32,374 nucleotides of DNA, taken from the NCBI GenBank assembly GCA_000708835.1, contig DF237754.1, positions 1 through 32,374 of the forward strand, in the 5' to 3' direction. The notes under the pieces are model-generated. The model was given only the letters and a program-made list of their open reading frames with translations, made no database searches and had not been told where the DNA came from. Source of the DNA: Klebsormidium nitens. Taxonomy: Eukaryota > Plantae > Klebsormidiophyceae. Shown in pieces: positions 4,820 through 32,374 of this stretch (the stretch's first letter is position 1; every line of letters starts with the position of its first letter). The translations under genes were made by a program, and so were the position numbers.

Positions 4820-5560
4820 AGCTGTCTGTGACGGGTTGTATTGTCGGACGAAAACGCCTTCCAGGGCTCTTTGCATTCTCACGGCCGAAACTAGTTTCTT
4901 TCAGATGTTTGCAATATGTTGTCCAAGCTGTCTGTGCCGTCCACGAAGAGGGTTTTGTAGATGGAACCTCGTCTTGATGGACAGCGCACCTGTCCAAGTT
5001 CTCGAGGCAAGTTTTTGCAGCCGAAGTCAGTATCTGAAAGCTGACCAACCATGCTGTCCAAGCCGTCTGTGCCGTCCACGAAGAGGGTTTTGTAGATGGA
5101 TACTTACCTTGATGGACTGCACAGCTGTCTAGGGCGTCGATGCAATTCTTCACGACCAAAACTCGAATTCCCAAAGGTCTCCAACGATGCTGTCCAAGCC
5201 GTCTGAGCCGTCCATGAAGGGATTCTTATAGGTAGTACTTCCTCTTGAGGGACAGCACACCTGTCCAGGTTCTCAATGCGAGTCTTCGCGGCCAAAGCTA
5301 GATTCTAAAAGCTTACGAACCATGCTGTCCAAGCCGTCTGTGCCGTCCACGAAGAGGGTTTTGTATATAAAAATTCGTCTTCATGGACAGCACAGTTGTC
5401 TATGGCGACGATGCAAGTCTTCACGGCCAGATCTCGAATTTTCAAAGCTCTCCAACGATGCTGTCCAAGCCGTCTGTGCCGTCCATGAAGAGCGTTTTGT
5501 AGATAGAAGCCTTCTTGAAGGACAGCATTGCCGTCGACATTCACCACCTTCTCAACGACT
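4820..5560 (+). repeat. Tandem array of ~135-bp units inside intron 4 of primase-helicase 1
   Basis: TGTCCAAGC(C/T)GTCTG(T/A)GCCGTCCA(C/T)GAAG starts at 4920, 5055, 5191, 5326 and 5462 (periods 135-136). Most units also hold an inverted ATGGACAGC and a second TGTCCA-like motif. Confidence 0.9.
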
Positions 5561-7177
5561 GCCAGATCATTGAGTGTCACGAACGTGTGTGCTCAAAAAC
5601 GATCTTAATCCATTTTGCAGCATATTCTCTGCTCAAACTACCCTCCCCGAGTGAAGATCTGGACGATTGCGCTCAAGCGACGCCTTCTGACGCTGGTCTT
5701 CCCGATGCGATTCTTCTATCCGGACAAAGAACTGGAAGCCGTTGCATGGAATCCGAGACCTTGAACTGGAAGACGTCTTGAAGGCCGAGCCCGAGAAGCT
5801 TCTGGTGTTCCTGGTGCAAGGCGCCAAGGACTGGTACGCGAGTGGGAAGAGACTCCTCGACATGCCGGAGAGCAGCAAGACGTACATGCAGTCATGGGAG
5901 CAAGATAATGATCCATTCGCAGCTTTCCTTCAGGAGGAAGGCAGGTTGAACGTCAAGGCTTTTGAGTCCACGCGTAGTCTCATGGACGCGTATAACAACC
6001 CAGATAGGATGGTCGACGGCGCGAGATTTGGCGACACTGGCGCACCTCAGATCCTCAATGACCGTAAGTTTGCGGACGCTTGCAAGAAGAAGGGACTGGA
6101 GGGCCCGGATAAGCCCTCCAAGCTGAGGTTTGCTAATCCAGGGCACATAGTCCGGGGTTATCGGGGATTCCAGCTCAACACGCCAACAAAAGAGAGTATC
6201 TTAGAGAAATAGCAAGGACTTTGAAAGATGTCATATTTTTGACATTAACAGCCTCTTCGTCGAGAACAAAATCATTCAAAGCTTCTATTATGATCTCGTT
6301 GTGTTGCACGAAAAAATGATGATATGCGCAGAAGGAAATACGCCACGCATTTATGTCGGATGAAGCGTGCACGTATCATCTCTATCTCTGGCTACAAAGA
6401 GCTCTGGCTACATCTATCGGAATTCTGATCTATGACACTTGTTCAATCCGTTGTCGACGTGCCGACTCAATCGAGCACTTTGATAGCTCGTCATGACTTT
6501 CAATCCGACACCTGACTGACACATTACGGCATCTTCAAGGTCAGAACGCTGCATGAAGCGTTTATCTTCGAACCCCTTGGAGCCAACAAAAAATCTTCTT
6601 TTGTGATTGTCGTTCCTCATCCATCACTTTCAACAACGCCTGTGTAGCATTGTCGAGTTCCTTGTCGAGGTCGATGGATTTGAGATTATTGAAAGCGCAA
6701 AAGTTTGGAAGGCGAATACTGTGTCAATCTATCAAGCTTCATATATCGGGTCAAACACCCGAGGCTGATTCCAAGCAGCCGGTAGGGTCCGCGGCTGCCT
6801 CCAACCTGTTGACCCACCCCCCCCCCGCGAAGCCCCATCAATCCTTTGAGCATTGCTGCTTTTTTTGATACAAAAGCCCTGGTCACCTTGAATGATGCAA
6901 GGTTGTCGTGCATGATGCGTGAAAATGCGTCGCAAGGCGGCGTCTAGGGAACGAGGCTGAGCAGGCTGATTCCGAGAGCCAGCGTGGCAACGTCCGAAAA
7001 GAGACCCGTGGCAGGTTCGTCCGCACGAACCGCGGCGATAATTGAGTCGCTCACTTGTAATGATCTATCACACGGCACTACATTGCGAAAAGTCGATATT
7101 ATCTGATGGGTTGATCAGGTTGATAGGTGCGATTGTCAATTAGGAAGAAAGCCTCCCTACCCGTCCACACAGCGGCA

Positions 7178-12560: not shown

Positions 12561-15500
12561 GCCGACTCCCGGCGTCCCGCTGTCGAATGACGGCGAAGCA
12601 TGGAATTCTATTCAGGTGTTATTCCAGAGCGTACGATCGTCAGGAGTCGCCCTCGCTACAGGACAATTTTGTGCGGCCGGCTCGCTCCCATGCCTACCTA
12701 CCAACTAACCATCAGCTCAACGGCATAAAATCTGCCAGCCACAAACCGCCACGTGCCCCCCCCTTCCCTCGATGCTCGCTGCCGCGCCGCGCTAGGGTCG
12801 CCCCCGATAGCCACAGTGTCAGTGCAGGTCAGTACCGCTAACCGTCGTCCGCTAACCAGCCTCTAACCATGGTCGCAGTCATGAGGTTTTGCCGTCCGAC
12901 AAAAAACTTTGCCGTCCGATCGCGAGCAGCGCGCGCAGGTTCAGCAGTCATTGACTGAGACACTGACTCAGTGAGGCCGGGAAGTCACTGCCGCAGTGCC
13001 ACGGTGACAGCTGTCATTCAGGCCACGCTGGCTTGGCCGTCCGATCGTGTCACTCGGAAAAAGAAAGGACACGTGACCGTCGATAAATCCTCAGGAAGTT
13101 GCAGAATATGAAACTTGGCGGGCCGGCTGGCGGCTCGGCATGCAGTCTAGCTCAGCAGGCTCTGCAGGTTCTGGAAGCTTTCGTCTGAGTCAGCACTCAG
13201 TCGGAAGCTAAGAAGCTTCTTACAGCATATTATTACCAGACAGAAGAACGAATAAACGCATCCACGTAAGCAGAAGAGAGCAAGGAGAGGTGCCTGGCTA
13301 GCCTGTACTTGAAACACTGGTCTGACTGGTGGGTGGCCATTTCCATTCATCCCAAAGTTGAGCGATTTCCTGCAGACCTCTTTTCATTACTTTCTATCAT
13401 TTCAGTCCCTCTCAGCTGAAAGCTAGCACTTTCAAGCCCATGGGCATGTTGCTTCCTTAATAATTGGCCCTACCGTAGTGGTGCCAGCAGCATTTGCAGC
13501 CAGGCTGCAAACGCTGACAGTGTGCTCACAAGCGTCCAGCAGCTGAAGCTGCCAGTGGCTGCGAGCGACAACTCTTCTCCATCAGCCTGGGTTGGCATCA
13601 AACCCCAGGAGGCTGCCGTGGCCCTCGGCCCTTGAAAAGGTGAGTACGTTCTTATTCTTTAAGGACACAGGGCGGGCTGCTCGGTTGGCAGCCCAAACTG
13701 CACATGCTTCTGATGAGACTGGCATAGTGCTCAAGAGCTGGCTGCTAAGCGGTCTAAGTGGGATCCAAGCTATATAAGCTCGATTATGTTGGCAACCCTA
13801 GCCAGCTCGCGCTGGTTTGAGCCAGCTAGCAGGCGCAAGTCTGAGCTCGGAATGCCCCTTGGAAGTGGTGTGCTTCACTGATCTTCAAGCCCGGGCTGGC
13901 AGGCAGCATGCATGCACCAATAGTGCATCTCCTCCTTTTTCAGCTCATTCTTCGTACTCCAGAGCTGATAAAGTGAAGCGTTCCAGGAGGGTCTGTCCAA
14001 CTTCGTCCATGCAGATTGTTTGCCCAGGCTGTCCAAGGTGTTCGAGCTCTGGCCAAGCTTTCTTTCATCGATTGGAATGCTGACGTTATCTACACCTCAA
14101 CTTAGACCTGCATATATGGACCCGGGCCAAACAGTCCCAGTATATTATAAGGGGTTCTGATCAAAGTGCTGACATCATGCAATCGGAACTATGACTATTT
14201 AAGTGGAGTATCTGAGTGGGGTCTGTCCAAGCGGTCTCTTGAGTGGTTGTCGTTGACCATACAAATCGTCTGGCACGCCCCTGGCCACACGCTGTTCAGG
14301 GTGTCCAAGCTCGGGGCAGAAAGTTCGATCATCCGAATTGCTGACGTCAACAGCCTCCCAACAGCCCGAGTACAGTGGCGTAAAGAGCCTTATCTACTGC
14401 TGACTTCAGTGTTGCTATGATTGATTGTGTGGTGAACCCAAGTCTCGAGTTCTTTCTTGAGGATTGAGCATGGCAGGGAGCCTCACCGTAATGCTCCCTA
14501 TTCTCAATGTATGCAGCGATGGTCTTGACGACTCGGTGGTAGCGTCAGAAGCCACCAAGGGGCTCCATTAGTTGGAGTGACCAGGGCGCATTCGGCTCCA
14601 GCCTCAGCCTCCGCATTTGCTGCAAGTGCGCCTGATCATGAGTGATAGGACGAACATGGAGAGCAGAGAAGGAGACTCCGAACATATGGAGGACTCACAA
14701 ATGGAGGTGAGTCTAGGTGAATGCAGCCTTGCATTTTGGCATTCCTAGACTCGTGACTGGCCCAATTTCCCGCTAAAGTTCACCGTTCGCTTCATTTCTC
14801 ATCTGATAGATCGTGCATATGGGATCCTAAGCATACGCAATCAGTTATAGCTTTAGAATTCATTGCAAAGTTCTGCCGTGAGTGTTGGTGTGTCATGCAA
14901 CCTCATCTTGCCAGGTTGTTGTCTTAGAGCTGCTGTCGGCTGATCTGCAAGCTGTTTCGAGATGGTGGTATGAGTGGTTACCCAGATGTTCAGAGCTGTC
15001 GCTAATGGCAGCTGTTGAAAGTTGCTTACGGACTGTGTGCACCCGTGGCACGAGTTTCTGGGCGACAGATCACGTGCAGGCTGATCAACCCTGCTGTTTG
15101 GGGTACTATTTGCACGTGCAGTGGACATATTAGGCAGGCTTCTTATTTGCAGCGGGACAGGTTGTGTCAAGGTGCCTCTCGCTATCGTTTGGCATCGAAA
15201 TCTTGACTGGAAGCCGGGTTTCTCAGGTCTGCAGACAAGCCTGATCAAGCCTGACTAGATCAGATCTGCCAAGCCTTATCTGATCAGATGTACGTGGCGT
15301 GCAACTCTGAGAATGATGGATACTTCTTGCCGCACAGCGGACAGAAAGGTTTTGTACTCTGTTCAGCCAAACAGGGGCATGGCATACTGCAATTCTTAAG
15401 ACTTGCACGTTGAAGGATTCTTCTTGGAAGTGGCCTGTGAACCTCAGGTTCAAACACATCCGTATCACGAACGCGTTGTGAATTCCAATGGACTTATCCC

Positions 15501-16347
15501 AGACGACGCTTCTGCTAATGCGGATTCGTTCGAAGTCGAGTCAGAATTTTCGAAAAAGCTTGATTGACGGTACGATCAAAGTGCTCTGCTGATACGAAAG
15601 CATATTTTTTTATCTTTCGAAGGAACGTTTATGCAATCCAAGACGTTTATCTTGATTGAATGTGTCTTCTCTCTTTCTACCAGGAGAATGACAACACGAG
15701 CATCGAATCAGACTCCGATGGAGAGGATATTGAGGACGCGGAGTTCAACCGCGAGGAAGAATCTTCCGACGAGGAGACCTCGCAGGATCGCCAGTTTCTG
15801 GACGACTCATCGCAACCTCCCATCGCCCCGGTCTCAGAGTGCGCTCGGATGGACGCGGAGCTTGGGCAGTCGGACACGGAGTCGCCAGATCGATTCCAGG
15901 GGGGGCGCAAGCGCACCAAACGCATTGACGACAGCGATGACAGCGCAGAGCCCCCGCCCCTCAGGACAAGCCGGCTTAGAGTCACGTTGCCGTCCGACTC
16001 GTCATCGTCGTCTGACGAGGACGTGCAAGAGGCAGGTGAAGCCACTGAGTCGAGCCCTGAGGTCGGAGACCGGTCTGCCACGTCGAGCGAGTGGGGCGAC
16101 CGTCCTGATGACGACGATCCTACGTGGGATTGGGACGATGAGGGGGATTCGGAGGAGCTGCGCGAGTTCTTTGGGGTCTGCCGCATCGATCTCGGGTTCG
16201 AGCTTAATCGCACGGAGTCGCAACAGGTACGCTCGCTCTCTGCAATTGTAGCTTCTGCTTGCTATATCTGAAAGTTGTTCAAGCTGTACCTCTTAGCGCT
16301 CCCTTCAAGAGTGTAGATCCGGATTCATCAACCGACCGCAAACAAGT

Positions 16348-16765
16348 TGTCCAAGTGTCCAAGGTTTTGCCAAACTCTTTTGGGGGAACATTCTGCTGAC
16401 GTCATTGCAACAGTTTATTGACGACACGTCAACAAAGTCAGGACAATGAGACAATCTAGATATCTGCCTCAGTGTCTTGATGCTGCCGTCACTTTCTTCA
16501 GAGGACAACCTAGGTTCGATACACTGTCCACATGTCCAAGGTTTTACCAAACTTTCTGGGGGGATTTCTTTGCCGACGTCAGCGCTCCAGTTCCTCAACG
16601 GCTCTTCTGCAGAATCCGGCCCACCGGACGGTCCATATAATTGCTTACGCTTTGGCGTTCCGAGTGCTTTCGACAGTTCCTTTCAGAGACGAGGCTCGAT
16701 ACAACTGTGTCCATGTGTCCAAGGTTTTACCAAACTTTCCAGGGAGATTTCTTTTGCTGACGTCA
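16348..16765 (+). repeat. Three dispersed bipartite TGTCCAAG-dimer/TGACGTCA elements in intron 16227-16847
   Basis: Dimers start at 16348, 16525 and 16708; (T/C)GACGTCA starts at 16397, 16574 and 16758 (offsets 49, 49, 50). Confidence 0.8.
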
Positions 16766-19159
16766 CCTTTTCTTCCGGCAGTGGGGCATACTTGAGTGCC
16801 TTCGATCAAGAGCAGGCTGATCTAAAATCCCTCTCTTCTCCCTGCAGAGACCGAGCCCATCTATCGAAGATTCTGTACCGGCAATCGATCCCGTCCTGGC
16901 CGCCGCTTCTGCACCGGCAATCGACCCTGTCCTGGCCGCCGCTCATCATTTCCACAGCCTCGGCGTTGTAACAGTCACCCACGACCTTTTCGAGAAGAAG
17001 TTTCCAAACGGTCAAGTCCGGAAGCAGCCGTGCAACTGGGGCTCCGAGTCCAAGCCTTGGAAGGAGGCAAACCTCGGCAACTGCCTCCAGGAGTTCGCCA
17101 AGTCGGGGCGCAACTCCATTGCCATCATCACGGAGCAATCGGACATCTATGCCCTCGACGTTGACGACAAGGACGGGGGCTTTGAAGCACTCGAGCAAAT
17201 GCTCGAGGAGCATGGAGGGTTTCTGGAGGACACGCCCCGAGTACTGACGGGGAATGGGGGGGTGCACATCCTCTTCTCTCTGTCTCTGTCCGAGAAGGCC
17301 GGCCTGTGCAACTCCGGCAACAAGGCAAAGATTCGGTACAAGGGCAAAGCGGTAGGCATCGACGTCCGTGGAAGGGGAGGAATGCTGTACACCGCACCCA
17401 GCAGCTACACAGGCCTCGACGGCACGCTGCGCTGCTACAAGTGGGACCACGAGATTCTGCCCGACCGCTCCAACCTCCGAGCCGCGCCGGACTGGCTCAT
17501 CTGCATCCTAAACGGCAGTGATGGACCGCCAAGCGGGAGTGCGGCGGTGCGTCAGGACGAGAACGGGGCCCGGTACGCTCAATTTCCCTTGTGCCCCCAC
17601 AAGATGACGATTCTGGTTACATGACATCCAAGAAACTTGATTGCCTGATTGAATATTGTGGGTCCCAATCATCAAGCGATCTGAGCAAAGCTAAGATGCG
17701 TCGAGAAGTACTGGCGCTTTCCTTGATGTATATAGAAACCAACTGAATTATTTATAGCGCTCTTCGAAGATGGTGCAGACGCTAAGGTAGCCGGGTCTGG
17801 GTTTCAGGGTCACTGGTTCGAAACCTTCAACGACTCTGGTCTTTTCCCTTTTTGGGCGACCACTACATCCACAGTATATGGAAAAGTTTGCGAATAGAAG
17901 TTCAGTGCAGTGATCTTGGCGCAGAGGCTAGAGTAGTGGACCTGTGTAATAAAGGTCACTGGCTCGAGCCTTCGAGGAAATCAATCCTCGATGTGTCCAG
18001 CCTTTTTGCTCAGCGAATGTGCAGGCCACCTTCTGACTTCGGGAACCAAGAATATCGAAGCAGCCCGTTTTGGATGGCAAGACCAACAAGTTTCTACCTA
18101 GAACAGAATCAGATTCGACAGCTTGGTCGAGCTTTCGAGTCAGTCGAACTTGGATCAGAATTCTCCTGCCCCTTCTTAACGCACAGTAAGAGCAATGAAG
18201 CTTGCTATTGTTGAGATCAGGCTCCACTGCAACGGAAATACCCAGATTCGGCATGACAAATCGGCGTCAGCATGCAATCGTCTGCTTTTCCAGTCACCTA
18301 TCCATGATGATGCCAGCAAGTTTGTTTATGTACGTAACGAGCTTCTAGACTGATACTAATTGCTTCATCCCTCGGCCTGCTCTATACATTCTAGGCCTAA
18401 TTCAGCCGGTCTAAGGCATGCTTCTGCTCACGCAATCTGTTCTTGTAAACACGATTACAGCCGTATGTCTTCTGGCTCTGAGATCGAAATATTATCTTGT
18501 TCTCCTGTGCAGGGGCTCGCAGGCTGTACCTTTCGGACCTCCTCGTCCTGTCGAAGGCCCTCAGCCAACTCCCCCAGCAGCGGTCTTGGAGCGCGTCAAG
18601 GCCTGTGTGGCTGCCACGGGCGACACCGCCTCCAGCTTCGATCGCCTCAAGATGGGCGACAGCGGGCCAATGTACGTCTTCCGGGTGGCTGGCCCGCGTT
18701 GCTGCCCGTACGGCAACCACCACAATGGTTCCAACAACTTCTCCGTGCTCGTGCGCAAGAAGGATCTGCTCTATTACTGCAACAGCTCGGAGTGCCAAGG
18801 GGTCCGCCCTCTGCTCAAGATCGGGGAGCTCACGCGCTCAGAGGCGGTGATTGAGGCGAGACCCGGGCTTTCAGTACTGATGACGTCAGCGCGATCAACG
18901 GCCTGCACAAGACATTCGTGGACGCCTGGGCCTTCGAAGGAGACGTGGGCGGCAGCAAGATTGTCGCTGAGATGTACGCAAGCTGCAGCAGGTGAGAACT
19001 TTACGAGATACACAAGAAGTCACTGAAGCAAGACGTTTAGAGGGCCTTTCAGAACGTCGACGGCTCATGGAGAGCACACGCCAGCCCTGGAACGGATCTT
19101 CTGGTAGTGCTCTGTCAGCGGCGGTCTGATGTCATTCGAAAGGGTCCCGTCTTAGCGTG

Positions 19160-19299
19160 TGTCCAAGTGTCCAAAGTCTACCACCAACTTTCCGCGACCA
19201 TCGATTGCTGACGTCATCGAAAATTTTCGGCCAGTCTCCGGTTGTCCGGGTGTCCAAGGTTCATTGCACACTTCTCGCGGCCGCCGGATGCTGACGTCA
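19160..19299 (+). repeat. Two bipartite TGTCCAAG-dimer/TGACGTCA elements in intron 18992-19471
   Basis: Dimers start at 19160 and 19243; TGACGTCA starts at 19209 and 19292 (offset 49 in both). Confidence 0.8.
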
Positions 19300-21760
19300 T
19301 CATCGTGCTCTGAGGCCGTGTTGGAAACACTTTCAACCGCCAATCTGAACTGTTGGGACACGAAACTGGAAACGCAGAAATGATAGACCTTCTACGAACG
19401 CTGTCGAGACTCGTGTGAATCAAGATCTTACTTTTCTTACAAGGGCATATCGTATATCTGCTCTTCTGCAGGCTGCGTTTCGATGGAGAAAGCTGGTGGT
19501 ATTGGAATGGGAGGCGCTTCGTGCGCGACGAGAAGAGCGCCTTCTATGTGAAGAACGTGCTCATCAATCAGCTCAGGACCGTCTACGCGCGGGTGAGGGA
19601 CGAGTGGAAGGCATCTATCGAGAGAAACACCGACGAGAAGGAGCAAGAGGCGTTGATGGAGCAGCTCAAGCGCCTGCGCACCTACAACAACAGCCGAAAA
19701 ATCACCAGTACGCTGGAACTCCTCCGCGGGGAGTTGGTCGATTTCGACTTTGCTCAGCAGCTGGATGCAGATCCGGACATCTTGAACGTAAAGAATGGAG
19801 TGCTCCTTCTGAGGACCGGCGAGCTCGATGTGCACCGGCCCCAGTACATGTGCTCCAAGATCGCGGAGACGGACTTCATGGTAAGCTGCCTATGCTGATT
19901 CAAAGAAACCCGAGCAACTTGCTTCTTTGACTAGCTAACACGCAACGAGAGCTGGCGGACCGTTCATGGAAGATGCTTTCTGTCTAATCACAAGAATCCG
20001 AGCGTTGACAGCTGCACGCGGGCTTTGCCATTGAATCCTCTAACAGCTTCCGAGTCATGTGTTTCCGTCTTGGCACTAGTGTGCATACTTTAGGATGCTT
20101 GAAGACGTGCTGTGATGCCATTTCTCTTGCGCTCAGGAAGGCAAGGAGTTGACTCGTTCCATCCATCAAGTGTGCCGATCACTTCTTGCAGGGGATGGAG
20201 TTTCCCACTCCGCGCATGGACGCCTTTATAGGCGACATCTTCAACCACGACGCTGAGCTGGTCGACTACGTACGGAAGCTGTTCGGCTACGCCCTCAATG
20301 GCCATACGCGGGAGGAGGTCTTCGTGCTCTTGCTCGGAAAGGGAGGTAAAGTCACTATCTTCTTGGTCTTGGATGCAAGACCTAGTGGAAGTGTGCAAGT
20401 AAAAATCCGGGGAGTTCCAGATGCCTCCAATCTTACATTGAGGTACGTGCTTCTCCAGCGCCGCGGGCGTCGGATCTGGCGATGTGGGAAAGAAGTCGAT
20501 CAACCACTGCTCCTGCATATTGGCCTAACAATTGACATGATTCTACAAGCTGGTCTTGAGCATCAACCCACATGGACGAACCGCGGTTGCTTCTCGGTGG
20601 GGCCGGTCCAACACTCACTTATTGCCGATACCTCAACCTGATCTTGTGCATTAATCCTTCTGCAGGAAATGGAAAGGGTGCCCTGAAGGAGATGCTGCAA
20701 GCTGTGGCCGGTGATTACTACGGCACCATGTCCAAGGACGCGGTTGTTACGGCACCTGGCCAGAGGGCCCCCTCTAAGAACGCGCCTACAAACTACCTTT
20801 ACGAGTTGATGGGCAAGCGGCTTGCAATCACTGACGAGACGGCGGAGGGGGAGCAAGTGGACCTCGGTCTCGTCTTGGCGGTGACGGAGGGCGGCTCAAT
20901 AAAAGCGCGGTGCCTCTACATTAACAACGTCGAGTTTGTTGTTACGCACACACCGTTTGTGCAGACAAATTACCCTCCTGTGATCTCCGCGACAGCGATC
21001 TTGGACAACGTCGAGCGCCGACTGCGAGCGATCCCGTTCCCCAACACCTACGTTAGAGCAAACGCTTTTGACCCCACGAACGCAACCCACCGCCTCAGAG
21101 ACGACAACTTGAAGGGACGCATGAAGGAAGAGGAGTCGCGTCGGCAGATCCTTACTTGGTTAGCGCGCGGCTCGGTGGAGTGGTACGCCAGTGCAGAGGG
21201 ACTTGGTTCTCCCCCCAAGGCCGTGAAGGATGCAACGGACGAGTACCTGCGTGAAGCGGACAAATTCCAGCTGTTCATCGACCAACACTGCGAGGTCGGA
21301 GAAGGATTGTCGACACTGCAGGCCGAATTCGCGGCCTGCTATGCGCAGTATTCCACCGAGAGGATCTCGTATGAGGAGTTGAGGAGGAGGATGGATACGA
21401 AAGGATTCAAGAGGGCCAAGAACAATGATTCGCCACGGCAGTTCTACTATCCGAGGATTAGGTGCTCTTACACTACTTAATACGATTTGTTGCTTGTGCA
21501 GTTCAAGAAAGATGGTAACGACAAAGTGGCTAGCGATGCAAGCCGGACATTGGACGAGCTTCGTATTCTCTTGTTACACTAGTAGGACTCCATTTGTACA
21601 TTCTCCGCAAGAGTTGTGATTGGCACTTGTTGAATTGAATCAATGTGTAATGACGATACTTGTATCGTCGAGGCTCAACAACCACGATCCCGTTCAACGA
21701 TTGCCATGATGATGTTATCAACAGATGTGTCGATTGAAAGTTTCTGCTTGGCCTGATGAA

Positions 21761-22243
21761 TGACGTCAGCGATTCATGACCATGAAAAGTTTGTGCCGGA
21801 GCTTGGACACTTGGACAGTCGTGAGCCGGAGACAGGCCCGCGCTCTGATGACGTCAGCGATGAGCGCCCGCGAAAACTTTGTGCCGGAACTTGGACACTT
21901 GGACACCGCTGATCCGAGGCATGCCCGCGCTCGGATTCGGACGTCAGCCGTGAGCGACCGGAAAAAGTTTTGCACCCGAGCTTGGACACTTGGACAGTCT
22001 CAAGCCGAGACAGGCCCGCGCACCGATGACGTCAGCGATGAGCGACCGCAAAAAGTTTTTGCGCCAGAGCTTGGACACTTGGACACCGCGAAGCCGAGAC
22101 GGCCCCTGGCTCCGATGACGTCAGTGACGAGCGACCAGACCTTGGACACTTGGACAGTTTCAAGCCGAGACAGGACCGCGCTCCGATGACGTCAGCAATG
22201 AGCGACCGCGAAAAGTTTGTGCCAAAGCTTGGACACTTGGACA
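21761..22243 (-). repeat. Array A: six ~88-bp bipartite units, reverse orientation
   Basis: CTTGGACACTTGGACA at 21802, 21890, 21981, 22070, 22141 and 22228, each preceded by TGACGTCA or a one-base variant. Confidence 0.95.
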
Positions 22244-22384
22244 ATTTCTGCACTCAATCGGGCACCGGCACATGCAACAGGATTGATTGCTCGCAAGCAC
22301 GCATTGATGCAGGATCGATACACGGTCAATATCAATGCATGTAGCCACGGTCACAAGGTTATGTTTGCAGTGGCTCGAGCGTCT

Positions 22385-23782
22385 CTAGTTCGTATCTCGC
22401 GCTACGTATCGCTTGTACGCCTTGGAGTTCTTAAACCTGGGCTCAAGATTCTCCTCAATCCATCTCCTCCGGGACTCTTCTAGCTCTCGATGCGCGCGCT
22501 CTAGTTCCGTCTTATATCTTCCAAAGTCCAGAAGATATTTGCGGTACTCATTGATGAGTGCGCATTCTTCGTTCATCCATGCCTTCCACGGCATGCCGCC
22601 AGATTTTTGGGCGATGAAGCCGGGTTTAAATCGCCTGTCGTACAAAGGGCCAAAGAGCTCCGTAGCGTAGCGAGCCATCGTCTCGTCTCGGTTCAAGCCG
22701 CCAACCGTGGAGCACGCAAAATGCTCGACGAATGTTTGCAGGGTCTTTGCTCTCGCCTCCTGCTGCAAAAAGAAAAATGTTGATGCTGCGGCCAGAATGC
22801 GAGATACGGTGCCGCCTCGACTTGGCAACCAAAAACGTCGATAGATGCACGCATATTGGTGATAGTGTGCACGCCGTTGGTGAATGGAACATTGCTGACT
22901 TTTACTTGCCCCCTTGCCGTGCACGATTGCTGCTCCATTCATTGAGGATGGATGTACATAGATCGTTTTCCAGTTGTTTAGAATTTTGAGCAATGTACAT
23001 CAATTACTAGAAATGTACACGAAAATCTGTCTAAAATATTGAGTGATGTACATCAATCACTAAAAATGTACACGAATCTCTGTCCAATCTGTCCAAAATA
23101 TTGAGTGATGTACATTAATCCACAAAAATGTACACGATTTTCTGTCCAAAGAGGAATATTGTTGGTCCTATGGCAAAATCGGCTGACTTGATGCTAGTAT
23201 CACCCTCCGTTGCTAGATATGGCTTGCGCTACGTACCTCAACCTTGTCAGGGTGGAAGTGCAGTGACCAAGTCTTATGGTGTAATACAATCTCGCCGCGA
23301 TCGAACATCTCCCAAGCTTTGCTCGGAAGAAGCTCGGCATCCGCGATGAGCCACGACAGGGGCGGTCGCACATACGTTGGTGCCTTTGGCATGGGTGGAG
23401 CGGGGATCGCGTTGCGAGCCATGATGCGGTACCTCGCCATATGCCGTGTTCTAAAGACAGCGCGTTCTCCATCAAGAGTGCGTCGATACTTTGAAACCGC
23501 AGCGTTGTTGCTTTGGCGCTTCAACTGACGAAAAGCTTCGGACTCCAAGCCGCAATATTTCGAGGGCGCACGATCGCTCGGAAGCTTGTAAGGCTCGCAT
23601 CCCATCCTCTCTCGGTGACCTTCCAAAGCTTGCTTCGACATGAAGCTCTTGTTGCAAATCTCGGATCCATCTTCACGGTGCCGTTCGAGGCAAATGAAGC
23701 ATCTTCCGTCCCGCTTCCAAAGCAGTGACGAAGCCGTAGTCGTTGATGCTGCGGCAACATCTGGTGGACTAACGGCAGACAT
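22385..23782 (-). CDS. Two-exon protein (~307 aa; exons 23782-23237 and 22762-22385) with a C2HC zinc finger, bZIP-like basic region, J-domain-like HPD motif and C-terminal helical region
   Basis: C-x11-C-NKSF-MSKQA-L-EG-H-x5-C; KRQSNNAAVSKYRR (N-x7-R); EIVLHHKTWSLHFHPDK aligns without gaps to the DnaJ consensus EIKKAYRKLALKYHPDK. Donor GAG|GTACGT and acceptor TTTTTGCAG|CAG are both phase 0, and the spliced frame is open. Confidence 0.65.
22986..23150. repeat. AT-rich ~52-62-bp tandem repeat (three copies) in the intron of the ZnF/bZIP-like gene
   Basis: TTGAG(C/T)(A/G)ATGTACAT(C/T)AAT...AAATGTACACGA..TCTGTC(C/T)AA repeated from ~22986, ~23039 and ~23101. Confidence 0.8.
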
Positions 23783-23962
23783 GATAAACTTTCAGCCGAG
23801 GATGATCGTAGAGAGGGCGCTCGACGAGCCCTAAACCGATCCAGCAGCAGTGACGATCCTAAATCGAACAAAGAGGGCGCCTTCAAATAGATGAATGCCA
23901 TTGTAAATCTAGATCAAGGTCGATCTGTCTTTCGATTTCTAAAGCCGTCGCGATTCACCACG

Positions 23963-24370
23963 TGTCCAAGTGTCCAAGGTCTGTGATCAACTTTTCGTGG
24001 TCGTCCATCGTTGACGTCATCCGAGCGCGGGCTTGTCTCGGTTTCGCGGTGTCCAAGTGTCCAGGGTCTGTGACCAGCTTTTCGTGGTCGTCCGTCGCTG
24101 ACGTCATCCGAGCGCGGGCTTGTCTCGGCTTCGCGGTGTCCAAGTGTCCAAGGTCTGTGACCAACTTTTCGTGGTCGTTCGTCGCTGACGTCATCCGAGC
24201 TTGGGCCTGTCTCGGCTTCGCGGTGTCCAAGTGTCCAAGGTCTGTGACCAACTTTTCGTGGTCGTCCGTCGCTGACGTCATCCGAGCTTGGGCCTCTTTC
24301 GGCTTCACGGTGTCCAAGTGTCCAAAGTCTAGCACAAAACTTTTCTTGGTCGCCCCTCGCGGACGTCATC
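23963..24370 (+). repeat. Array B: five 87-bp bipartite units, inverted relative to array A
   Basis: TGTCCAAGTGTCCA(A/G) at 23963, 24050, 24137, 24224 and 24311 (exact 87-nt period), each followed 49 nt later by TGACGTCA (GGACGTCA in the last unit). Confidence 0.95.
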
Positions 24371-24430: not shown

Positions 24431-24925
24431 TCAGTTCGATTCTGACTGTGATTCAGAATTTGAATCGACAGATTCTGCTCTCTTTCTCGGAGCCGCCTTC
24501 TTTCCAACGCTTTTCTTTGTGGTGGTCTTGCTAGTCGTTTTTGCCCTTGAAACCTTCTTTGAAGCACTCATACTCTCGATGTCTTCGATTTCCATCTTTG
24601 TAGGTGTACTCTGAAAGGTGCCCTCAAATGGCAAACCTGTCGGGCGATTACTTTTCATCACCGGACCGATCTCAACCGAGTATCCATACTTCTTGTTTAA
24701 TGAACCTCGTGTGGTTTCTTGTATAAGGACAACTACCCTCTGTGGGAGCGAAACGTTCTTCCCTTGGCACTTCTGAGTCCGAAATAGTTGCGATCCTGCT
24801 CGGGCCCCTGCTTGACAAACGCGCCCTTTCTTTGCATCGATTTCAAGTCGTGTATCCTTCAACAAAGCGAGGGCATCATTCCCCTTTGCATCGTAGGCAG
24901 CAATCACTCGAAAGCTTCGTTTCAT
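24431..24925 (-). CDS. MC1-like non-histone chromosomal protein with a Lys-rich C-terminal tail (~164 aa)
   Basis: MKRSFRVIAAYDAKGN..KKGRVCQAGARAGSQL..VLIQETTRGSLNKKYGYSVE..KSNRPTGLP parallels, from memory, archaeal MC1 (RNFVLRDEDGN..GKQPRQAALKAA..IRLRERGTKKVHVF..KNRPAWMP) and the giant-virus MC1-type ETTRGS motif. Tail KKVSRAKTTSKTTTKKSVGKKAAPRKR. Intronless. Confidence 0.7.
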   Translation of the reverse strand: MKRSFRVIAAYDAKGNDALALLKDTRLEIDAKKGRVCQAGARAGSQLFRTQKCQGKNVSLPQRVVVLIQETTRGSLNKKYGYSVEIGPVMKSNRPTGLPFEGTFQSTPTKMEIEDIESMSASKKVSRAKTTSKTTTKKSVGKKAAPRKRAESVDSNSESQSESN

Positions 24926-25106
24926 GCATTCCATATTGGATGACCTGGTGCACTTCTGATGATAGGTTTGTAGAAAATAATAACTCCGCCCCCTAATGCA
25001 TATCTGACTGTGCGGATTCAACAATCTCAGCCGCAACCAAGAACATGGAGTGCATATGGTGTAAATTGCACGCGGAGAGACAGGAAAAAAGTGTCAAATG
25101 CCTTTT

Positions 25107-26555: not shown

Positions 26556-26603
26556 NNNNNNNNNNNNNNNNNNNNNNNNNNNNNNNNNNNNNNNNNNNNN
26601 NNN
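26556..26603. other. Assembly gap (48 N)
   Basis: Run of N. Confidence 1.
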
Positions 26604-27487: not shown

Positions 27488-27877
27488 ATGGAATCGACGA
27501 ATCACAAACATGGATCGACCACGTGTGCTGCTTGTCTCGAGGCGAGCATCTATAAGGACGAGCATCAGGCCAAGAAGAGAGAATATTCGAAGAGTTACTA
27601 TCAGATACATAAAGACGAGATCCTCTTGAAGAAGGCTCTTGAACGATTGCGAAGGGAAGCAAGACAAGCAGACGGACGAGGCAGCGACTTTATGAGGCAC
27701 AGGCTGCTCTTCCTTGGATTCGATCGTACTAGACAATTACACCTCTTTGCAAGCGTGGGCTCCGTCGAGAGCCGCGTTCCATGTCAAAAAATTTCTGGGG
27801 TTGGAAATATAAGGGGGCTCCGAACCTCCTTCGGTCTGTGGAAAGCATGGCAACGAATTCGATTGCGCACGTGTTAG
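27488..27877 (+). CDS. Small hypothetical protein with CxxC and a basic/aromatic helix
   Basis: TCAACLEAS..KKREYSKSYYQIHKDEILLKK resembles the EYxKxYYxxNKEKI-type helices of small DNA-virus proteins. It sits between the recombinase and primase 3. The C-terminal half is doubtful. Confidence 0.4.
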   Translation: MESTNHKHGSTTCAACLEASIYKDEHQAKKREYSKSYYQIHKDEILLKKALERLRREARQADGRGSDFMRHRLLFLGFDRTRQLHLFASVGSVESRVPCQKISGVGNIRGLRTSFGLWKAWQRIRLRTC

Positions 27878-30695
27878 AAGCGTATGCACAAGAAGGACTA
27901 TACGCTATCCCGGCAAAAGTTAAAGCAACGGACGAAGGATCGAAGCACATTCTGGCAACAATGCCGCATGCGAAAGGCAATGACGCTATACGAACGGTGT
28001 CCGATTGGAGAATGGCAAGGGATCGAATCATGGAAAAGATTGAAAAAGATCGATTCAACTTTTTGGCGATAAAGACGGGAACCATTTCAGACATCTTCGT
28101 GCTCGATATAGACACACGAGACAAACCAGAAAAAGATCTCCAATCTGGCATGCCTCTCTGGAATAGATTGATTGCAGAACACGGAGAACCAGACACTTTA
28201 AGAGCCACTTCAGCCAGCGGAGGCCTCCATTACTACTTCTCGTACGGTGAATCACTCAACGAGGGACTCCAATCAGGGAAGTGTTTCGCTGGCGTAGACT
28301 ACGAGGGCCAGTATTATGGAATAGATGGGCGCGGAGACGGAGGCGTTGTTTTGGCCCCGCCAGGCTCACCTCAGATTGGATTGAATTACACTTGGTGCGC
28401 ACAACCCTTAAGGACGAACATCCGACCAGCTCCATCATGGTTGATTCGATTCCTCAACGATTCTGCTGGGAGATCCGCAAACAAAAGTCTCGTGTTGACT
28501 TCGAGCGATCGAATTCAAGAGTTGTCAGCAAACGGTGCTGATATCGAGCAAACAAGGGGGCTTGAATCAAGCACCGTCGAAGAAACAATGCGAGTGGAGG
28601 TGGATACCGATGACTCACACAATAGACAAGCAATCGAGCACAAGAGGATTGCTGATGCGATGATGCAGCTGTTACAAGACGCTGGACTCGACACGGAGGT
28701 TCGCTTCTCTGGCAACGTGACCTTCCGCGGTTCGTACGGTATTCTCTATTCATTCATCTGTGATGGTCCTCGAACCTGCATACATGGTCATCAATACACT
28801 GGTAGCAACAATCTGACTCTCGTGAAGCGAGGATGGACGGTATTCTATCGATGCTTTGGCTCTGAATGCACCGAGTTGAAGCCTCTTACGGAGCTTGGCA
28901 ACATTCCAATACCAATATCGTTGTTGGATGCCAATCCTGTACGTCTGCACCCGACTCATGATTGGAGTACCTTTCCGAATAACATAAGAACGATGTCGCA
29001 GGATGCGGTGGAAGCACACATGAATCTTATCCGGCGTAACGTGACGCAGCGCTATCGAGGCATGGCTGCGATCTTCTCGGCCATGTATCTCGTTGACGGA
29101 CGCATCATTGCTGAGGGCAAACGCTTTCACTACTGGAACGGTCGCAGATGGATAATCGATAACGCGTTCCATATACAAACCGTCTTTAGTAACCACATGG
29201 CTCGTATCATGACCTGGTATTCGAAACAGAGATTGAATGCTTTCAAGCATGAGATTTGCGCACATATGAGAGGCTCTGCAACAGAGCAGAACGTGTTATC
29301 AACGCTAGAGTCAGTCCTTCCAAATTGGGCAATGAACCCAACGACCGAAGAAGAAAGAAAAGCATGCAGCACCGCGTGGAGGGTGGTCAACAAAACGTAT
29401 CCGTTCCCAACGAAGAGGGATCTGGTTGATCTGACACGGGGATCGGAGGTTCGTGTATGTCTCGAATTTGTATGAACTCCTTGCAGGCTCCTCAACCTCT
29501 CAGCGAGATGATGGATATTGCCAATCCGTTCTTGTTTGCGTGTGCGAACGGCGTCATTAACACCGAGACCGGAAAGTTGCTCGCATTTGATCCTGCTCAT
29601 CTGTTTTCACGCGCGTCGAAAGCAACTTTTCGTGGAATGCCAAAGGCCGAAAGCCGATTCGAGAGGTTCCTGCTTGATTGCTTCAACGATGACAGAGAAG
29701 TACTCGAATGGTATCAGCTTTTCTGCGGCTATTGTATGATGGCGGATACGAGTGAACAATTGTTCCTAGTCAAGCAAGGCAATGGAGCTAATGGAAAGTC
29801 CTTGACAAAGCTAGCAAGTCTCGAAGTTCTAGGCAGTTACGCTGTCGTTATGTCAGAAGACTGCATCATCGAGGCCGGTAAACGGTCCGCTGGCGCGGCT
29901 TCGAGCCACATAATGGCTCTTCGGGGCGGGCGGCTCGCTGAGACCGACGAGTCGGGAGAGAAAGCAGTCCTGAATGAGGCCGCAATGAAAGCCCTATCAA
30001 GCGGGGGAACCACTACAGGGCGCGAGCTGCATAGCAGACAAGAGACATTCGAGCTCACTGTGAAGACCGTCCTCAACACGAACTACAAGCCTATTCTTCA
30101 GAACGTATCCTACTGTGTCACTCGACGCTTGGCACTACTTCCGATGTTGGTCACTTTCTTACCTCCCGAAAAGCTCGAATCCAGCAAACCACGCCCGAAG
30201 CTTATCGATACAACCCTGGAAACCTACTTGAAAAGCGACCAAGGTCGAGATGAGGGTCTTTCATGGTACGCAAAGGGAGCAAGACGTTATCATGAACTCA
30301 AGCGAGCAAATCCCAACACGCTACCATTGATGCGCAGACCTCGTGTGATGGAAGAAGCCGTTAGAGCATACATCAACGACTCGGATATCGCTAGGCGATG
30401 GATCGTCGATTGTCTCGAATTCGAAGATATACAACCCGGAGAAAGAGCGACATGGCACTTAGCCGTTGGCGAACAGCTCGGAGAGGTGTTCCGAGCTTGG
30501 TTGAAGGAAGAAGACTTGACTAGCTCCTTGTCGGCAACGGCGCTGAAAAAACGCATCTTAGATTATGCTGAAGGAAAGAATCGGGTGGTTGTAGACGGCC
30601 GCTTCACAAACAGCCAAGTACAATCTCGAGGTCAGTTCAAAGGCCTTTCGGGGGTTCGATTGAAATCTGGCTATGAATCTCATGCATTGGAGTAG
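27847..30695 (+). pseudogene. Primase-helicase 3: intronless Prim-Pol + Zn-ribbon + D5/P4-family SF3 helicase, with one frameshift at ~29470
   Basis: IFVLDIDT, SASGGLHYYF, GIDGRGDGGVVLAPPGS; RTCIHGHQYTGSNNL..YRCFGSEC; FHYWNGRRW; FACANGVINTETGKL; Walker A GNGANGKS; RLAETDE; TGRELHS; LNTNYKP; TRRL. Adding one T to GAATTTGTATG joins ORFs 27781-29475 and 29457-30695. The start may be 27781 or 27847. Confidence 0.9.
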
Positions 30696-31092: not shown

Positions 31093-32374
31093 TTAGTACA
31101 TCAAGAGCCGCTGCCGTACAGCCGGTTCCCACGTGTCCGCTCTGCCCGCAATTCGCAGCTTTGGGGCGTCAACTCGTGTGAGGTCGCTATTCCGTCCGCT
31201 GATCAGGTTAGCAAGGATGATCATGAACGCAACGAGGCTACTATACCAAGCTTGCGTCTTGAAGCTCACGAGGAACGCGTTGCACGACTCCGCTGCTGAG
31301 GTGTTGACCCAACACACAGAGTCGTAGTAGTCTACACGTGATCCATACGGAGATTGAATTAGTTCAGCATAGAAAAGCCTTGAGACATGGCGTTGTAGAA
31401 GAATGCCACATATATATACACTCTTGAAAGGCAGTCCAAACTTGCCTCCTTTTTCTTTAGAAGAGAGAGGGCGTTTTTGACTGAGTCACTCTAAATCCGC
31501 TCCTTTGCACACACATTCGAGATGGGCGGCCACTTCGAGCAGGATTAACGCACATGTGCCTTGCAAATGCATCAGGGTCTCACCTGTGTTGTATGATGGA
31601 CCACACTTGTGTGCCTCGGCGGTTGTGTGGTGGAAATGGAATCTGCAAAGATCAAGCACGAATGAGAATAAAAAATGTATAGCAGTGCACAGCTGAGGAA
31701 AGTCGCAATGCTGTATGGCAATGGCACGGAAGATCACAAGAATGACTCTCAACAAGAGCCGCCCCTTGGCTTGCGCAAATCTTCTGACCTTACCTATCGA
31801 TCAGGAACCGAACGTCTGCAAAGAACGCTGGCTCTCTCCGCATCGCGTAGGCACGCAGCTTGCAGGCGTTGTCGTGGATGAGGTACAGAGGAAGATCTCT
31901 CCGATTGAGCCGCGTGTACAGGACGGTGAAGGGGTCTCGCGGCGACTCCCCGCGGAGCATGACGTGGAAGCCATAGATGACACAATGAGGGCACGAGAAA
32001 ACGAAGCCGCCCTTTGTGTGCCGTTGCAGGCATTTTTTCTTCTTTATCCCGCTTTCGAGAGCGACCTTGGCATCGAATTCACCGACGGTGAGCCCGCTCC
32101 GACACCGGTGCTCCTCGTCGCGCTCGCGAGACCTACCGAGATCGTCTTCGAACGGTTCGTACTGCGGGAGAGGGCGTTTTTGCTCCCATCCTGGAAGCGG
32201 GTAGCAGCCTAGCTCTCGTTGCTCACGGCAGTAGGGATGGTCCCGGGGAAGAGGGCCAGGCTCCGATCCGTCCACCTCGAGACCGAGCCTTTCGTTCAAG
32301 AGGATCCGTTCCGGCGGAAGCAGGGCGTACTCGTGCGGTGCTGGAGGGGAAAGGCTTTCGACCCCGGGGAGAAG
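31093..32374 (-). mobile_element. KDZ (Kyakuja-Dileera-Zisupton)-type transposase, spliced, 5' end beyond the window. Exons >32374-31794, 31642-31584, 31331-31093.
   Basis: GFVFSCPHCVIYGFHVMLRGESPRD, LIHDNACKL, FLIDR|FHFHHTTAEAHKCGPSYN and NTSAAESCNAFL match the KDZ catalytic pattern (D-N-A-C, DRFH..H..C, N-T/S-x-x-x-E). Introns are GT-AG with matching phases (2,1). Confidence 0.8.

What the first reader, a model, noticed from the sequence alone, without database searches (positions are those of the whole stretch)
16348..24370. Bipartite cis-element with an invariant 49-nt offset: (TGTCCAAG)x2 + TGACGTCA
Seen: about 16 copies at four sites (two introns of primase 2, arrays A and B). In the copies I counted, the offset from dimer start to palindrome start is 49 nt (16348/16397, 16525/16574, 19160/19209, 19243/19292, 21817/21768, 21905/21856, 23963/24012) and once 50 nt. 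The intervening and flanking sequence diverges strongly between sites, and unit length ranges from ~83 to ~180 bp. Conserved motifs and spacing with free spacer sequence point to selection for two-protein binding geometry. Established: TGACGTCA is the bZIP CRE/C-box site, and P4-family initiators bind repeated octamers. Inference: a composite origin, recombination or enhancer module.
Basis: partly seen in the sequence, partly recalled or inferred. Interest (0 to 1): 0.85.

Follow-up and report, generated by a model that had tools for sequence, protein, structure and literature searches.

The report
Two-motif repeat arrays around primase genes
A 58-base DNA module, made of a doubled 8-base word and a classic bZIP-protein site held 46-51 bases apart, is repeated in arrays inside and beside primase-helicase genes of integrated virus-like elements in the alga Klebsormidium; it is a real, selected protein-docking module, most likely an enhancer-type control region, and a replication origin is not excluded.

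Summary
The window is the whole Klebsormidium nitens scaffold DF237754.1. It carries 16 units of (TGTCCAAG)x2 plus TGACGTCA at four sites; shuffles expect about 0.01. Dimer-to-palindrome offsets are 49 (11 units), 50 (3), 51 (1) and 33 (1, a deleted unit). Two degenerate units lie upstream of primase 2.

Between arrays, the dimer and a 12-base extended palindrome stay 94-96% identical. The spacer falls to 32-75% and the rest of each repeat to background (28-35%). The spacer is not fully free: it holds a weaker A/T motif.

About 70 units occur in seven contigs from three datasets, each contig carrying a primase-helicase gene and some also a zinc-finger gene I call Z. Across them the spacing is narrow but not invariant (46-51, with a different mode in each lineage). 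The extended palindrome is flipped in some lineages and absent in one. Related elements carry a different partner motif with the same GCTGACGT half-site at the same syntenic places.

Best reading (0.45): enhancer-like arrays of composite binding sites for a host bZIP and a second factor. Main rival (0.22): iteron-type replication origin. No function was tested. Novelty: new variant of a known kind.

The parts
14030..14088 (+). Degenerate unit upstream of the annotated primase-2 start. The octamer pair has a 1-nt insertion; a TGACGTTA variant lies 51 nt from its start.
   Evidence: Read from the sequence; annotated gene start at 14638.
14293..14349 (+). Degenerate unit with octamers 9 nt apart; TGACGTCA lies 49 nt from its start.
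16348..16765 (+). Three units (periods 177 and 183) in the putative intron 16227-16847 of primase 2.
   Evidence: the reading frame needs an upstream exon; intron phase is consistent with my exon model.
19160..19299 (+). Two units (period 83) in the putative intron 18992-19443 of primase 2.
21760..22243 (-). Array A: six units (periods 71-91) between the stop codons of primase 2 and gene Z.
   Evidence: inverted relative to array B at 75-89%.
23963..24370 (+). Array B: five units (period 87), 180 nt upstream of the gene Z start codon and 60 nt beyond the stop of gene a.
   Evidence: The same syntenic site in L001 and L013 holds a single unit of the other module type.
14638..21480 (+). Primase 2 (Prim-Pol + D5_N + P4-family/SF3 helicase), annotated span. 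My exon model: 15660-16226, 16848-17572, 18513-18991, 19444-19880, 20192-20345, 20666-21480.
   Evidence: Pfam; NCBIfam TIGR01613; exon-by-exon matches to full-length relatives; annotation span and 1028 aa product; fold like ASFV C962R and poxvirus D5/E5 helicases.
22385..23782 (-). Gene Z (annotated in part as KFL_008050050): two exons, a conserved C2H2/C2HC-like zinc finger and a long C-terminal helix. It lies between arrays A and B.
   Evidence: Homologues lie next to arrays in L012 and L017.
22975..23149 (.). AT-rich 62-bp repeats with single TGTCCAA/TGTCTAA words and GTACA-centred palindromes, inside the gene Z intron and midway between arrays A and B.
   Evidence: Related GTGTACAT repeats sit in the same intron in L012, L014, L016 and L017.
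4916..5527 (.). 135-bp-period array (4.5 copies) in a putative intron of primase 1, with single TGTCCA words in both orientations and no palindrome.
   Evidence: the flanking exon matches are at 4595-4765 and 5793-5996.
1209..5996 (+). Primase 1, a paralogue with introns (Prim-Pol, D5_N and helicase pieces). Its integrity was not assessed.
27781..30695 (+). Primase 3, an intronless paralogue, broken once (one frameshift) relative to its 95%-identical intact relative P0001.
24431..25036 (-). Gene a, the first conserved gene of the primase-3-type gene set (a, b, c, d, primase, e, f, g, h, i).
31793..32374 (-). C-terminal half of gene f, cut by the scaffold end. In L001 and L013 the next dimer array lies just beyond this gene, so about 1 kb past the end of the window.

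Best explanation
Each unit is a 58-bp composite docking site. A head-to-tail pair of octamers (TGTCCAAG, or TGTCCGAG in L017) is followed by a short A/T sub-motif. About 46-51 nt from the start of the pair lies a 12-bp extended C-box/CRE-type palindrome whose constant half is GCTGACGT. I propose three steps. A host bZIP dimer binds the palindrome. A second sequence-specific factor binds the octamer pair; it could be a host factor or an element protein such as the zinc-finger protein Z. The tandem arrays then act as orientation- and position-independent enhancer-like control regions for the genes of this family of integrated virus-like elements (the P2-type primase-helicase, Z and their neighbours). 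Shown here: selection on the motifs and on spacer length, the link with these genes, and the interchangeability with a second module type. Inferred: which proteins bind, and that the effect is on transcription.
For: Motif-specific conservation: between arrays the dimer is 0.94 and the extended palindrome 0.96 identical per column, against 0.59 for the spacer and 0.28-0.35 for flanks and linker. Spacer length is kept at 46-51 in 46 of 47 units while linker length varies from 29 to about 130 nt. Arrays lie upstream of, inside introns of and downstream of the genes, in both orientations, with 1-9 copies, which is enhancer-like behaviour. The palindrome is flipped as a 12-mer in L012, L014 and L017 and absent in L011, so the modules are used flexibly. 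Related elements carry units built from GCTGACGTGG plus an inverted pair of GACT-containing words at the same syntenic sites. One element (L001) carries both module types, which looks like a repertoire of factor-binding modules rather than one initiator's iterons. The primase C-terminal region is as conserved as the rest of the protein between elements with different array types. The unit cores show no single-strand structure (z >= -0.15), and array periods are mostly not multiples of 3, so the function is at the duplex-DNA level. From established knowledge: an ACGT-core palindrome of this type is the standard bZIP site.
Against: No expression, binding or chromatin data were available. Array A lies between two gene 3' ends, and the arrays do not point consistently towards promoters. 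No host promoter could be scanned, so use of the same module by host genes is unknown. The factor for the octamer pair is unidentified. Every array-bearing locus carries a replication gene, which fits an origin equally well.
Confidence: 0.45

Rival explanations
1. The arrays are iteron-type replication origins or initiator-loading sites. The octamer pairs would be bound by one of the element's own replication proteins (the P4-family primase-helicase, or the UL9-like helicase seen in relatives), with the bZIP site as an auxiliary element as in many viral origins.
For: The arrays lie within about 3 kb of a Prim-Pol/D5_N/P4-family helicase gene in all seven array-bearing contigs. The helicase domain matches TIGR01613, 'phage/plasmid primase, P4 family': P0030 scores 181.9 bits against a cut-off of 108.7, and P0001 scores 107.7. 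In W, L012 and L017, plus-oriented arrays inside the gene face minus-oriented arrays beyond its stop codon. AT-rich palindromic repeats lie midway between arrays A and B and are conserved in the same intron elsewhere. A Herpes_ori_bp-type helicase gene occurs in related loci.
Against: There are up to six arrays per locus, many inside introns. The same octamer serves primases only about 27% identical, whereas primases 61% identical sit beside different array types. The primase C-terminal region is not specifically diverged. Both module types sit in one element. No match to the P4 alpha origin-binding domain appeared among solved structures by sequence or among the listed top 50 Foldseek matches.
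Confidence: 0.22
2. The arrays are transposition or recombination sites, that is, subterminal repeat regions in the manner of CACTA/KDZ-type transposons. They would be bound by a transposase or accessory protein (Z or gene f), and the intronic copies would be non-autonomous derivatives.
For: Arrays A and B are inverted repeats (75-89%) bracketing a 1.7-kb segment that holds gene Z. Z is inverted relative to its homologues in L012 and L017, as expected from an inversion with one breakpoint in an array. Gene f homologues give sub-threshold KDZ transposase hits (E 0.018-0.068 in 3 of 6), and the K. nitens gene model over f-i has a weak CxC4 hit. CACTA elements carry several hundred bases of closely spaced direct and inverted subterminal repeats (PMC8978399).
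Against: No terminal inverted repeat or shared sequence lies outside the arrays (read from the sequence). Array orientation relative to the enclosed DNA differs between W (divergent) and L011, L012, L017 (convergent). In the primase-3-type element the arrays are internal and syntenic, not terminal. The KDZ hits are below threshold.
Confidence: 0.1
3. The arrays are neutral minisatellites: a young dispersed repeat that spread locally by duplication, with no function of its own.
For: Copy number and period vary freely. Arrays are gained or lost in introns whose positions are conserved: the intron between exons 4 and 5 carries an array in L017 but not in W.
Against: Divergence is strongly position-specific, with motifs about 95% identical and spacers down to 32% between the same pairs of units (p about 1e-6 to 3e-7 for single pairs). 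Spacer length is preserved while linkers vary. The 12-mer palindrome keeps its outer bases even where it is flipped. Neither neutral decay nor gene conversion predicts this.
Confidence: 0.08

Closest known systems
Tandem-repeat enhancers of DNA viruses and retroelements built from reiterated transcription-factor sites (for example the CRE-bearing repeats of the cytomegalovirus major immediate-early enhancer, and the bZIP-site elements of plant pararetrovirus and T-DNA promoters); recalled from memory, not tested
   Same: A short composite module holding an ACGT-core bZIP site is reiterated in tandem with variable copy number. It works in any orientation and position, and it belongs to a nuclear DNA parasite that depends on host factors.
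   Different: Here the module pairs the bZIP site with a doubled octamer at 46-51 nt. It occurs mostly in introns and 3' flanks of a primase-helicase gene. No transcriptional effect has been shown.
Phage P4 ori/crr: clusters of octamer iterons bound by the alpha primase-helicase (recalled from memory; the finding cites it)
   Same: The helicase domain falls in the P4-family primase model TIGR01613. Short octamer repeats are clustered in more than one place near the gene, in both orientations.
   Different: The host is eukaryotic and the genes carry spliceosomal introns. There are many arrays per locus. The octamers are coupled to a host-type bZIP site. The iteron type does not track the primase. 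The nearest solved folds are ASFV C962R and poxvirus D5/E5, not P4 alpha.
Subterminal repeat regions of CACTA (En/Spm-like) transposons (PMC8978399)
   Same: There are many copies of a short motif in direct and inverted orientation over several hundred bases. A weak KDZ/CxC4 signal occurs in a neighbouring gene.
   Different: The arrays are not at recognisable element ends. No CACTA-type termini were found. The units are 58-bp composites 71-183 bp apart rather than closely packed 12-mers.
Composite plant promoter elements that pair a B3/ARF-type TGTC site with a nearby bZIP ACGT-core site (recalled from memory; a lead only)
   Same: The octamer begins with the same four bases as that class of site, is directly repeated, and is coupled to an ACGT-core site.
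   Different: No test was possible. The spacing here is far larger, and the remaining four bases of the octamer are equally conserved.

Membership tests
bZIP C-box/CRE-type binding site | 8-bp palindrome with an ACGT core, present above chance | tested here: met
   16 exact copies against 0.65 expected; 13 of them lie in or next to units.
bZIP C-box/CRE-type binding site | Conserved as a site, flanking bases included, while neighbouring DNA drifts | tested here: met
   Positions 47-57 are 0.96 identical between arrays against 0.35 downstream. The 12-mer keeps its outer bases when flipped.
bZIP C-box/CRE-type binding site | Bound by a bZIP protein of the organism | not testable with these tools
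   No binding data. No bZIP gene was found in the window.
Iteron-type origin (P4 ori/crr-like) | Clusters of short direct repeats next to the initiator gene | tested here: met
Iteron-type origin (P4 ori/crr-like) | The initiator is a P4-family primase-helicase | tested here: inconclusive
   TIGR01613: P0030 scores 181.9 bits (cut-off 108.7), P0001 scores 107.7, and primase-2 exon 5 alone scores 81.2. The fold is nearest to ASFV C962R and poxvirus D5/E5. No P4 alpha origin-binding domain hit was seen.
Iteron-type origin (P4 ori/crr-like) | Iteron sequence tracks the initiator's DNA-binding part | tested here: not met
   The same octamer lies beside primases about 27% identical, and different modules lie beside primases 61% identical. 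The last ~170 primase residues are 66-69% identical, like the rest of the protein. Both module types occur in L001.
Iteron-type origin (P4 ori/crr-like) | An AT-rich unwinding element adjoins the iterons | tested here: inconclusive
   AT-rich palindromic repeats at 22975-23149 lie 730-810 nt from arrays A and B, not adjacent. They are conserved in the gene Z intron elsewhere.
Iteron-type origin (P4 ori/crr-like) | One or two defined sites per replicon | tested here: not met
   Four to six arrays per locus in W and L012.
Tandem-repeat enhancer | Tandem reiteration of a composite of factor-binding motifs | tested here: met
Tandem-repeat enhancer | Occurs in either orientation and at variable positions relative to the genes | tested here: met
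   Upstream, intronic and 3' positions; plus and minus orientation.
Tandem-repeat enhancer | Raises transcription of linked genes | not testable with these tools
CACTA/KDZ subterminal repeats | Motif arrays within a few hundred bases of both element termini, next to terminal inverted repeats | tested here: not met
   No shared sequence lies outside arrays A and B. In the primase-3-type element the arrays are internal and syntenic.
CACTA/KDZ subterminal repeats | The element encodes a KDZ/CMC-type transposase | tested here: inconclusive
   KDZ hits at E 0.018-0.068, below the cut-off, in 3 of 6 gene f homologues; weak CxC4 hit.

The most novel reading that the evidence does not exclude
The arrays are the cis-acting replication or maintenance sites of a so far undescribed class of nuclear, intron-bearing, P4-type primase-helicase elements of streptophyte algae. 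An element protein would load on the octamer pairs and a host bZIP would act as the licensing cofactor, with plus- and minus-oriented arrays bracketing the primase gene much as ori and crr bracket the replication gene in phage P4.
Probability: 0.2. Interest if true: 0.8.

Novelty: new variant of a known kind. Interest (0 to 1): 0.5.

Why it matters
Integrated DNA elements with their own primase-helicases are common in algal genomes, but their control sequences are unknown. Here the cis-elements can be read straight from comparative sequence. One module type pairs a doubled octamer with a bZIP site; a second pairs GACT-containing words with the same bZIP half-site. The two are swapped at syntenic positions and kept under selection. 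This gives a concrete handle on how such elements are wired into host signalling, or how they replicate. It also gives defined motifs to look for in expression, chromatin and comparative data from Klebsormidium, an early-diverging relative of land plants. The 16-mer itself appears in no paper in the searched library.

Tried and rejected
1. A scan of viral contigs for the bipartite pattern gave 0 hits.
2. A scan of metagenome contigs with a 20-50 nt gap gave five hits. All are one unrelated sequence seen in five samples, with a 31-nt gap and no similarity to the window, so this collection gave no spacing histogram.
3. I used an array-derived ORF as a protein query to census arrays independently of primases. 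It gave only one hit, which nevertheless led to another primase locus, L013.
4. A regular-expression screen for a bZIP-like neighbour found none, and Pfam found no bZIP in gene Z.
5. Gene Z carries an HPDK motif that suggested a J domain. Pfam gave no DnaJ hit and the structure model is of low confidence there, so I dropped the idea.
6. Gene Z and gene f show no detectable homology.
7. The hairpin or structured-strand idea for the unit core fails: z-scores run from -0.15 to +1.4.
8. No Rfam family or tRNA was found in the window.
9. The P4 alpha origin-binding domain gave no sequence hit among solved structures, and the listed top 50 Foldseek matches are all ASFV and poxvirus helicases.
10. 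Intron creation by the repeats (introner idea) is rejected: the intron position between exons 4 and 5 is shared by W and L017, but only L017 has an array there.
Exons were searched one by one by reference, and only exon lengths and phases were summed.


Full report
OBSERVATION. The 16-mer (TGTCCAAG)x2, allowing two mismatches, occurs 16 times in the window; 100 shuffles expect 0.01. TGACGTCA occurs 16 times against 0.65 expected. The two together, 33-37 nt apart, occur 11 times against 0.00 expected. The units fall at four sites:
- three at 16348-16765 (periods 177 and 183);
- two at 19160-19299 (period 83);
- six on the minus strand at 21760-22243 (array A, periods 71-91);
- five at 23963-24370 (array B, period 87).

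The offset from dimer start to palindrome start is 49 in 11 units, 50 in 3, 51 in 1, and 33 in one unit with an internal deletion. Two degenerate units lie at 14030 and 14293. The offset is modal rather than invariant.

ANATOMY AND SELECTION. For 15 units with offset 49, from five arrays:

| Region | Inter-array identity |
|---|---|
| Flanks | 0.28 |
| Dimer | 0.94 |
| Spacer | 0.59 |
| Positions 47-57 | 0.96 |
| Rest of the period | 0.35 |

The conserved palindrome is really a 12-mer, GCTGACGTCATC in most window units. The spacer holds a weaker conserved A/T sub-motif about 26-34 nt from the dimer start (as it stands, AACTTTTC at 24163-24170).

For single pairs of units the contrast is sharp. 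Between the intron-1 array and array B, motif positions match at 26 of 27 and spacer positions at 10 of 31 (Fisher p = 3e-7), yet the spacer length is identical. Linker length between cores ranges from 29 to about 130 nt. Motifs and spacer length are therefore constrained, while spacer sequence is largely free and linker sequence entirely free. Arrays A and B and the array of L001 are homologous over whole units (spacer identity 66-75%). The intron arrays share only the 58-bp core. The cores have no unusual single-strand folding, and the periods are mostly not multiples of three.

CONTEXT. The window is the entire scaffold DF237754.1 of Klebsormidium nitens NIES-2285. It holds three paralogous genes for Prim-Pol + D5_N + SF3 helicase proteins on the plus strand.
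- Primase 1 and primase 2 have spliceosomal introns.
- Primase 3 is intronless and is broken once, by one frameshift, relative to its 95%-identical relative P0001.
- The helicase part matches NCBIfam TIGR01613, 'phage/plasmid primase, P4 family'.
- The model of primase-2 exon 5 (pLDDT 86.6) is closest to the ASFV C962R and poxvirus D5/E5 helicases.

Exon-by-exon matches to full-length relatives, the lack of a start codon in the Prim-Pol exon and GT..AG boundaries give an in-phase six-exon model summing to 3177 nt. The annotated gene spans 14638-21480 and gives 1028 aa. On this model the units at 16348-16765 and 19160-19299 are intronic, and the degenerate units lie 300-600 nt upstream of the annotated start.

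Between arrays A and B lies gene Z (22385-23782, minus strand). It has a conserved C2H2/C2HC-like finger and a long C-terminal helix, with 22 homologues in Klebsormidium-type data. Its intron holds AT-rich palindromic 62-bp repeats.

RELATED LOCI. Contigs reached through primase or Z homologues, and one reached through an ORF called across an array, carry the same module.

| Locus | Source | What it carries |
|---|---|---|
| L001, L013 | JGI 3300060284 | Primase-3-type copies; 4 and 2 units, offset 49 |
| L014 | Logan SRR23617307 | 1 unit, offset 49 |
| L011, L012, L017 | JGI | Primase-2-type genes with introns; 12, about 20 and 14 units |

All seven array-bearing contigs carry a primase-helicase gene; within each, the nearest arrays lie inside it or within about 3 kb of it. 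In three of them (W, L012, L017) gene Z follows an array.

Across all loci, 47 units have the palindrome. Their offsets are 33 x1, 46 x2, 47 x1, 48 x7, 49 x17, 50 x8 and 51 x11, with lineage modes of 49, 48 and 51. In L012, L014 and L017 the 12-mer reads GATGACGTCAGC, the exact reverse complement of the window's form, so the site is flipped relative to the dimer. In L011 the dimer and the A/T sub-motif are present but the palindrome is absent. In L017 both octamers read TGTCCGAG. Arrays sit in different introns in different copies, although intron positions are shared. In W, L012 and L017, arrays upstream of or inside the gene point with the gene, and arrays beyond its stop codon point against it. 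Gene Z is inverted in the window relative to L012 and L017, as an inversion with one breakpoint in the array would produce.

A SECOND MODULE TYPE. More distant primase-3-type elements (L008 from K. nitens; L009/L010 from JGI) lack the octamer pair. At the same intergenic positions they carry 90-98-bp-period arrays. Each unit there holds GCTGACGTGG plus an inverted pair of GACT-containing words, for example TTTTGACTGA (read from the sequences). L001 and L013 have a single unit of this second type just beyond the stop of gene a, which is exactly where the window has array B. So the two module types share the GCTGACGT half-site, replace one another at syntenic sites, and coexist in one element. 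The last ~170 residues of the primase are as conserved (66-69%) as the rest of the protein between elements with different arrays.

MECHANISM. The data show a selected, duplex-DNA, multi-protein docking module tied to this element family. I rate an enhancer-like role as most likely (0.45), for these reasons:
- the modules are position- and orientation-independent;
- they are numerous per locus and modular, with the palindrome optional or flipped;
- they are interchangeable with a second module built on the same bZIP half-site.
From memory, that second module's partner word contains the core of a WRKY-type site. This is a resemblance only and was not tested.

The origin reading (0.22) keeps real support: adjacency to P4-family primase-helicases, octamer repeats, opposed arrays bracketing the gene, and an AT-rich palindromic repeat between arrays A and B. 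It is weakened by the number of arrays, by their intronic positions and by the lack of co-variation with the primase. A transposition or recombination role (0.10) rests on the inverted arrays, the Z inversion and sub-threshold KDZ/CxC4 hits in gene f; no termini were found. A neutral minisatellite (0.08) is contradicted by the position-specific conservation.

LIMITS. No genome-wide scan of a eukaryotic assembly was possible. All related loci except L013 were reached through primase or Z proteins, so the association is partly built into the sampling. L013 was reached through an array ORF, and it too proved to be a primase locus. No RNA, binding or chromatin data were available.

1. Two scripts printed match bounds, and the mechanical ORF list printed ORF bounds, that bracket the place of the frameshift in primase 3. 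I did not use, join or repeat them.
2. I first spotted the second module type in the consensus lines that the tandem-repeat tool prints. I then re-read it from the sequences themselves and rely only on those.
3. In my own reasoning I recalled a few short binding-site motifs and a short stretch of a known viral protein from memory. None was entered into a tool, script, note or this report; such comparisons are given here by name only and marked as memory.

Noticed in passing
window 1209-5996, 14638-21480, 27781-30695: Three paralogous Prim-Pol/D5_N/SF3-helicase genes (27-38% identical) lie in tandem on one 32-kb scaffold. Two have introns and one has none. L012 and L017 show the same order: a P2-type gene, arrays, gene Z, then a P3-type gene. 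This may therefore be one large composite element rather than separate insertions.
   Followed up: partly
window 22975-23149; L012 13602-13818; L014 2118-2235; L016 10562-10631; L017 10601-10780: AT-rich repeats carrying GTGTACAT/ATGTACAT words sit in or just after the intron of gene Z in five loci. The intronic stretch is 79% identical between W and L012 where the exons are about 72% identical, so the intron sequence looks conserved.
   Followed up: partly
L008 497-793, 5215-5344, 16612-16953; L009 1992-2246, 4736-5028, 15229-15554; L001 4597-4690: A second array type has units with GCTGACGTGG plus an inverted pair of GACT-containing words. It sits at the same syntenic sites as the dimer arrays.
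   Followed up: partly
L001 11934-13175 and homologues (window 31793-32374); L008 14193-19482: Gene f gives repeated sub-threshold matches to the KDZ transposase model, always to the same part of the profile. The K. nitens gene model covering genes f-i has a weak CxC4 hit. Genes i, h, g and f may be exons of one transposase-like gene, which would put the array in an intron.
   Followed up: partly
L008 266-6033; L009 2447-3208: A Herpes_ori_bp-type (UL9-like) helicase gene lies upstream of the primase-3-type gene set in two related loci. It is absent from L001, where a host TIR-NB-ARC-LRR gene lies 2.3 kb from gene a.
   Followed up: no
window 23228-23260 (end of gene Z exon 1): An HPDK motif is conserved in most Z homologues at the exon 1 end, reminiscent of a J domain. 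Pfam gives no DnaJ hit and the structure model is unreliable there.
   Followed up: yes
window 7749-8153: An ORF gives weak matches to T5orf172/MUG113 (GIY-YIG-like) domains, a domain type common in large DNA viruses.
   Followed up: no
window 12114-12560: A 76-bp-period array (6 copies, GC-rich) of unknown meaning lies between primase 1 and primase 2. It is unrelated to the dimer module.
   Followed up: no
window 25229-25921, 26556-26603, 25930-26553 and 26606-27388: Two runs of N are present, and a 0.6-kb stretch is duplicated on either side of the second gap (both copies match the same part of L001 gene c). This is probably an assembly artefact.
   Followed up: partly
window 17760-17980: Two stretches in intron 2 of primase 2 look tRNA-like by eye (T-loop-like words). 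ARAGORN and Rfam report nothing there.
   Followed up: yes
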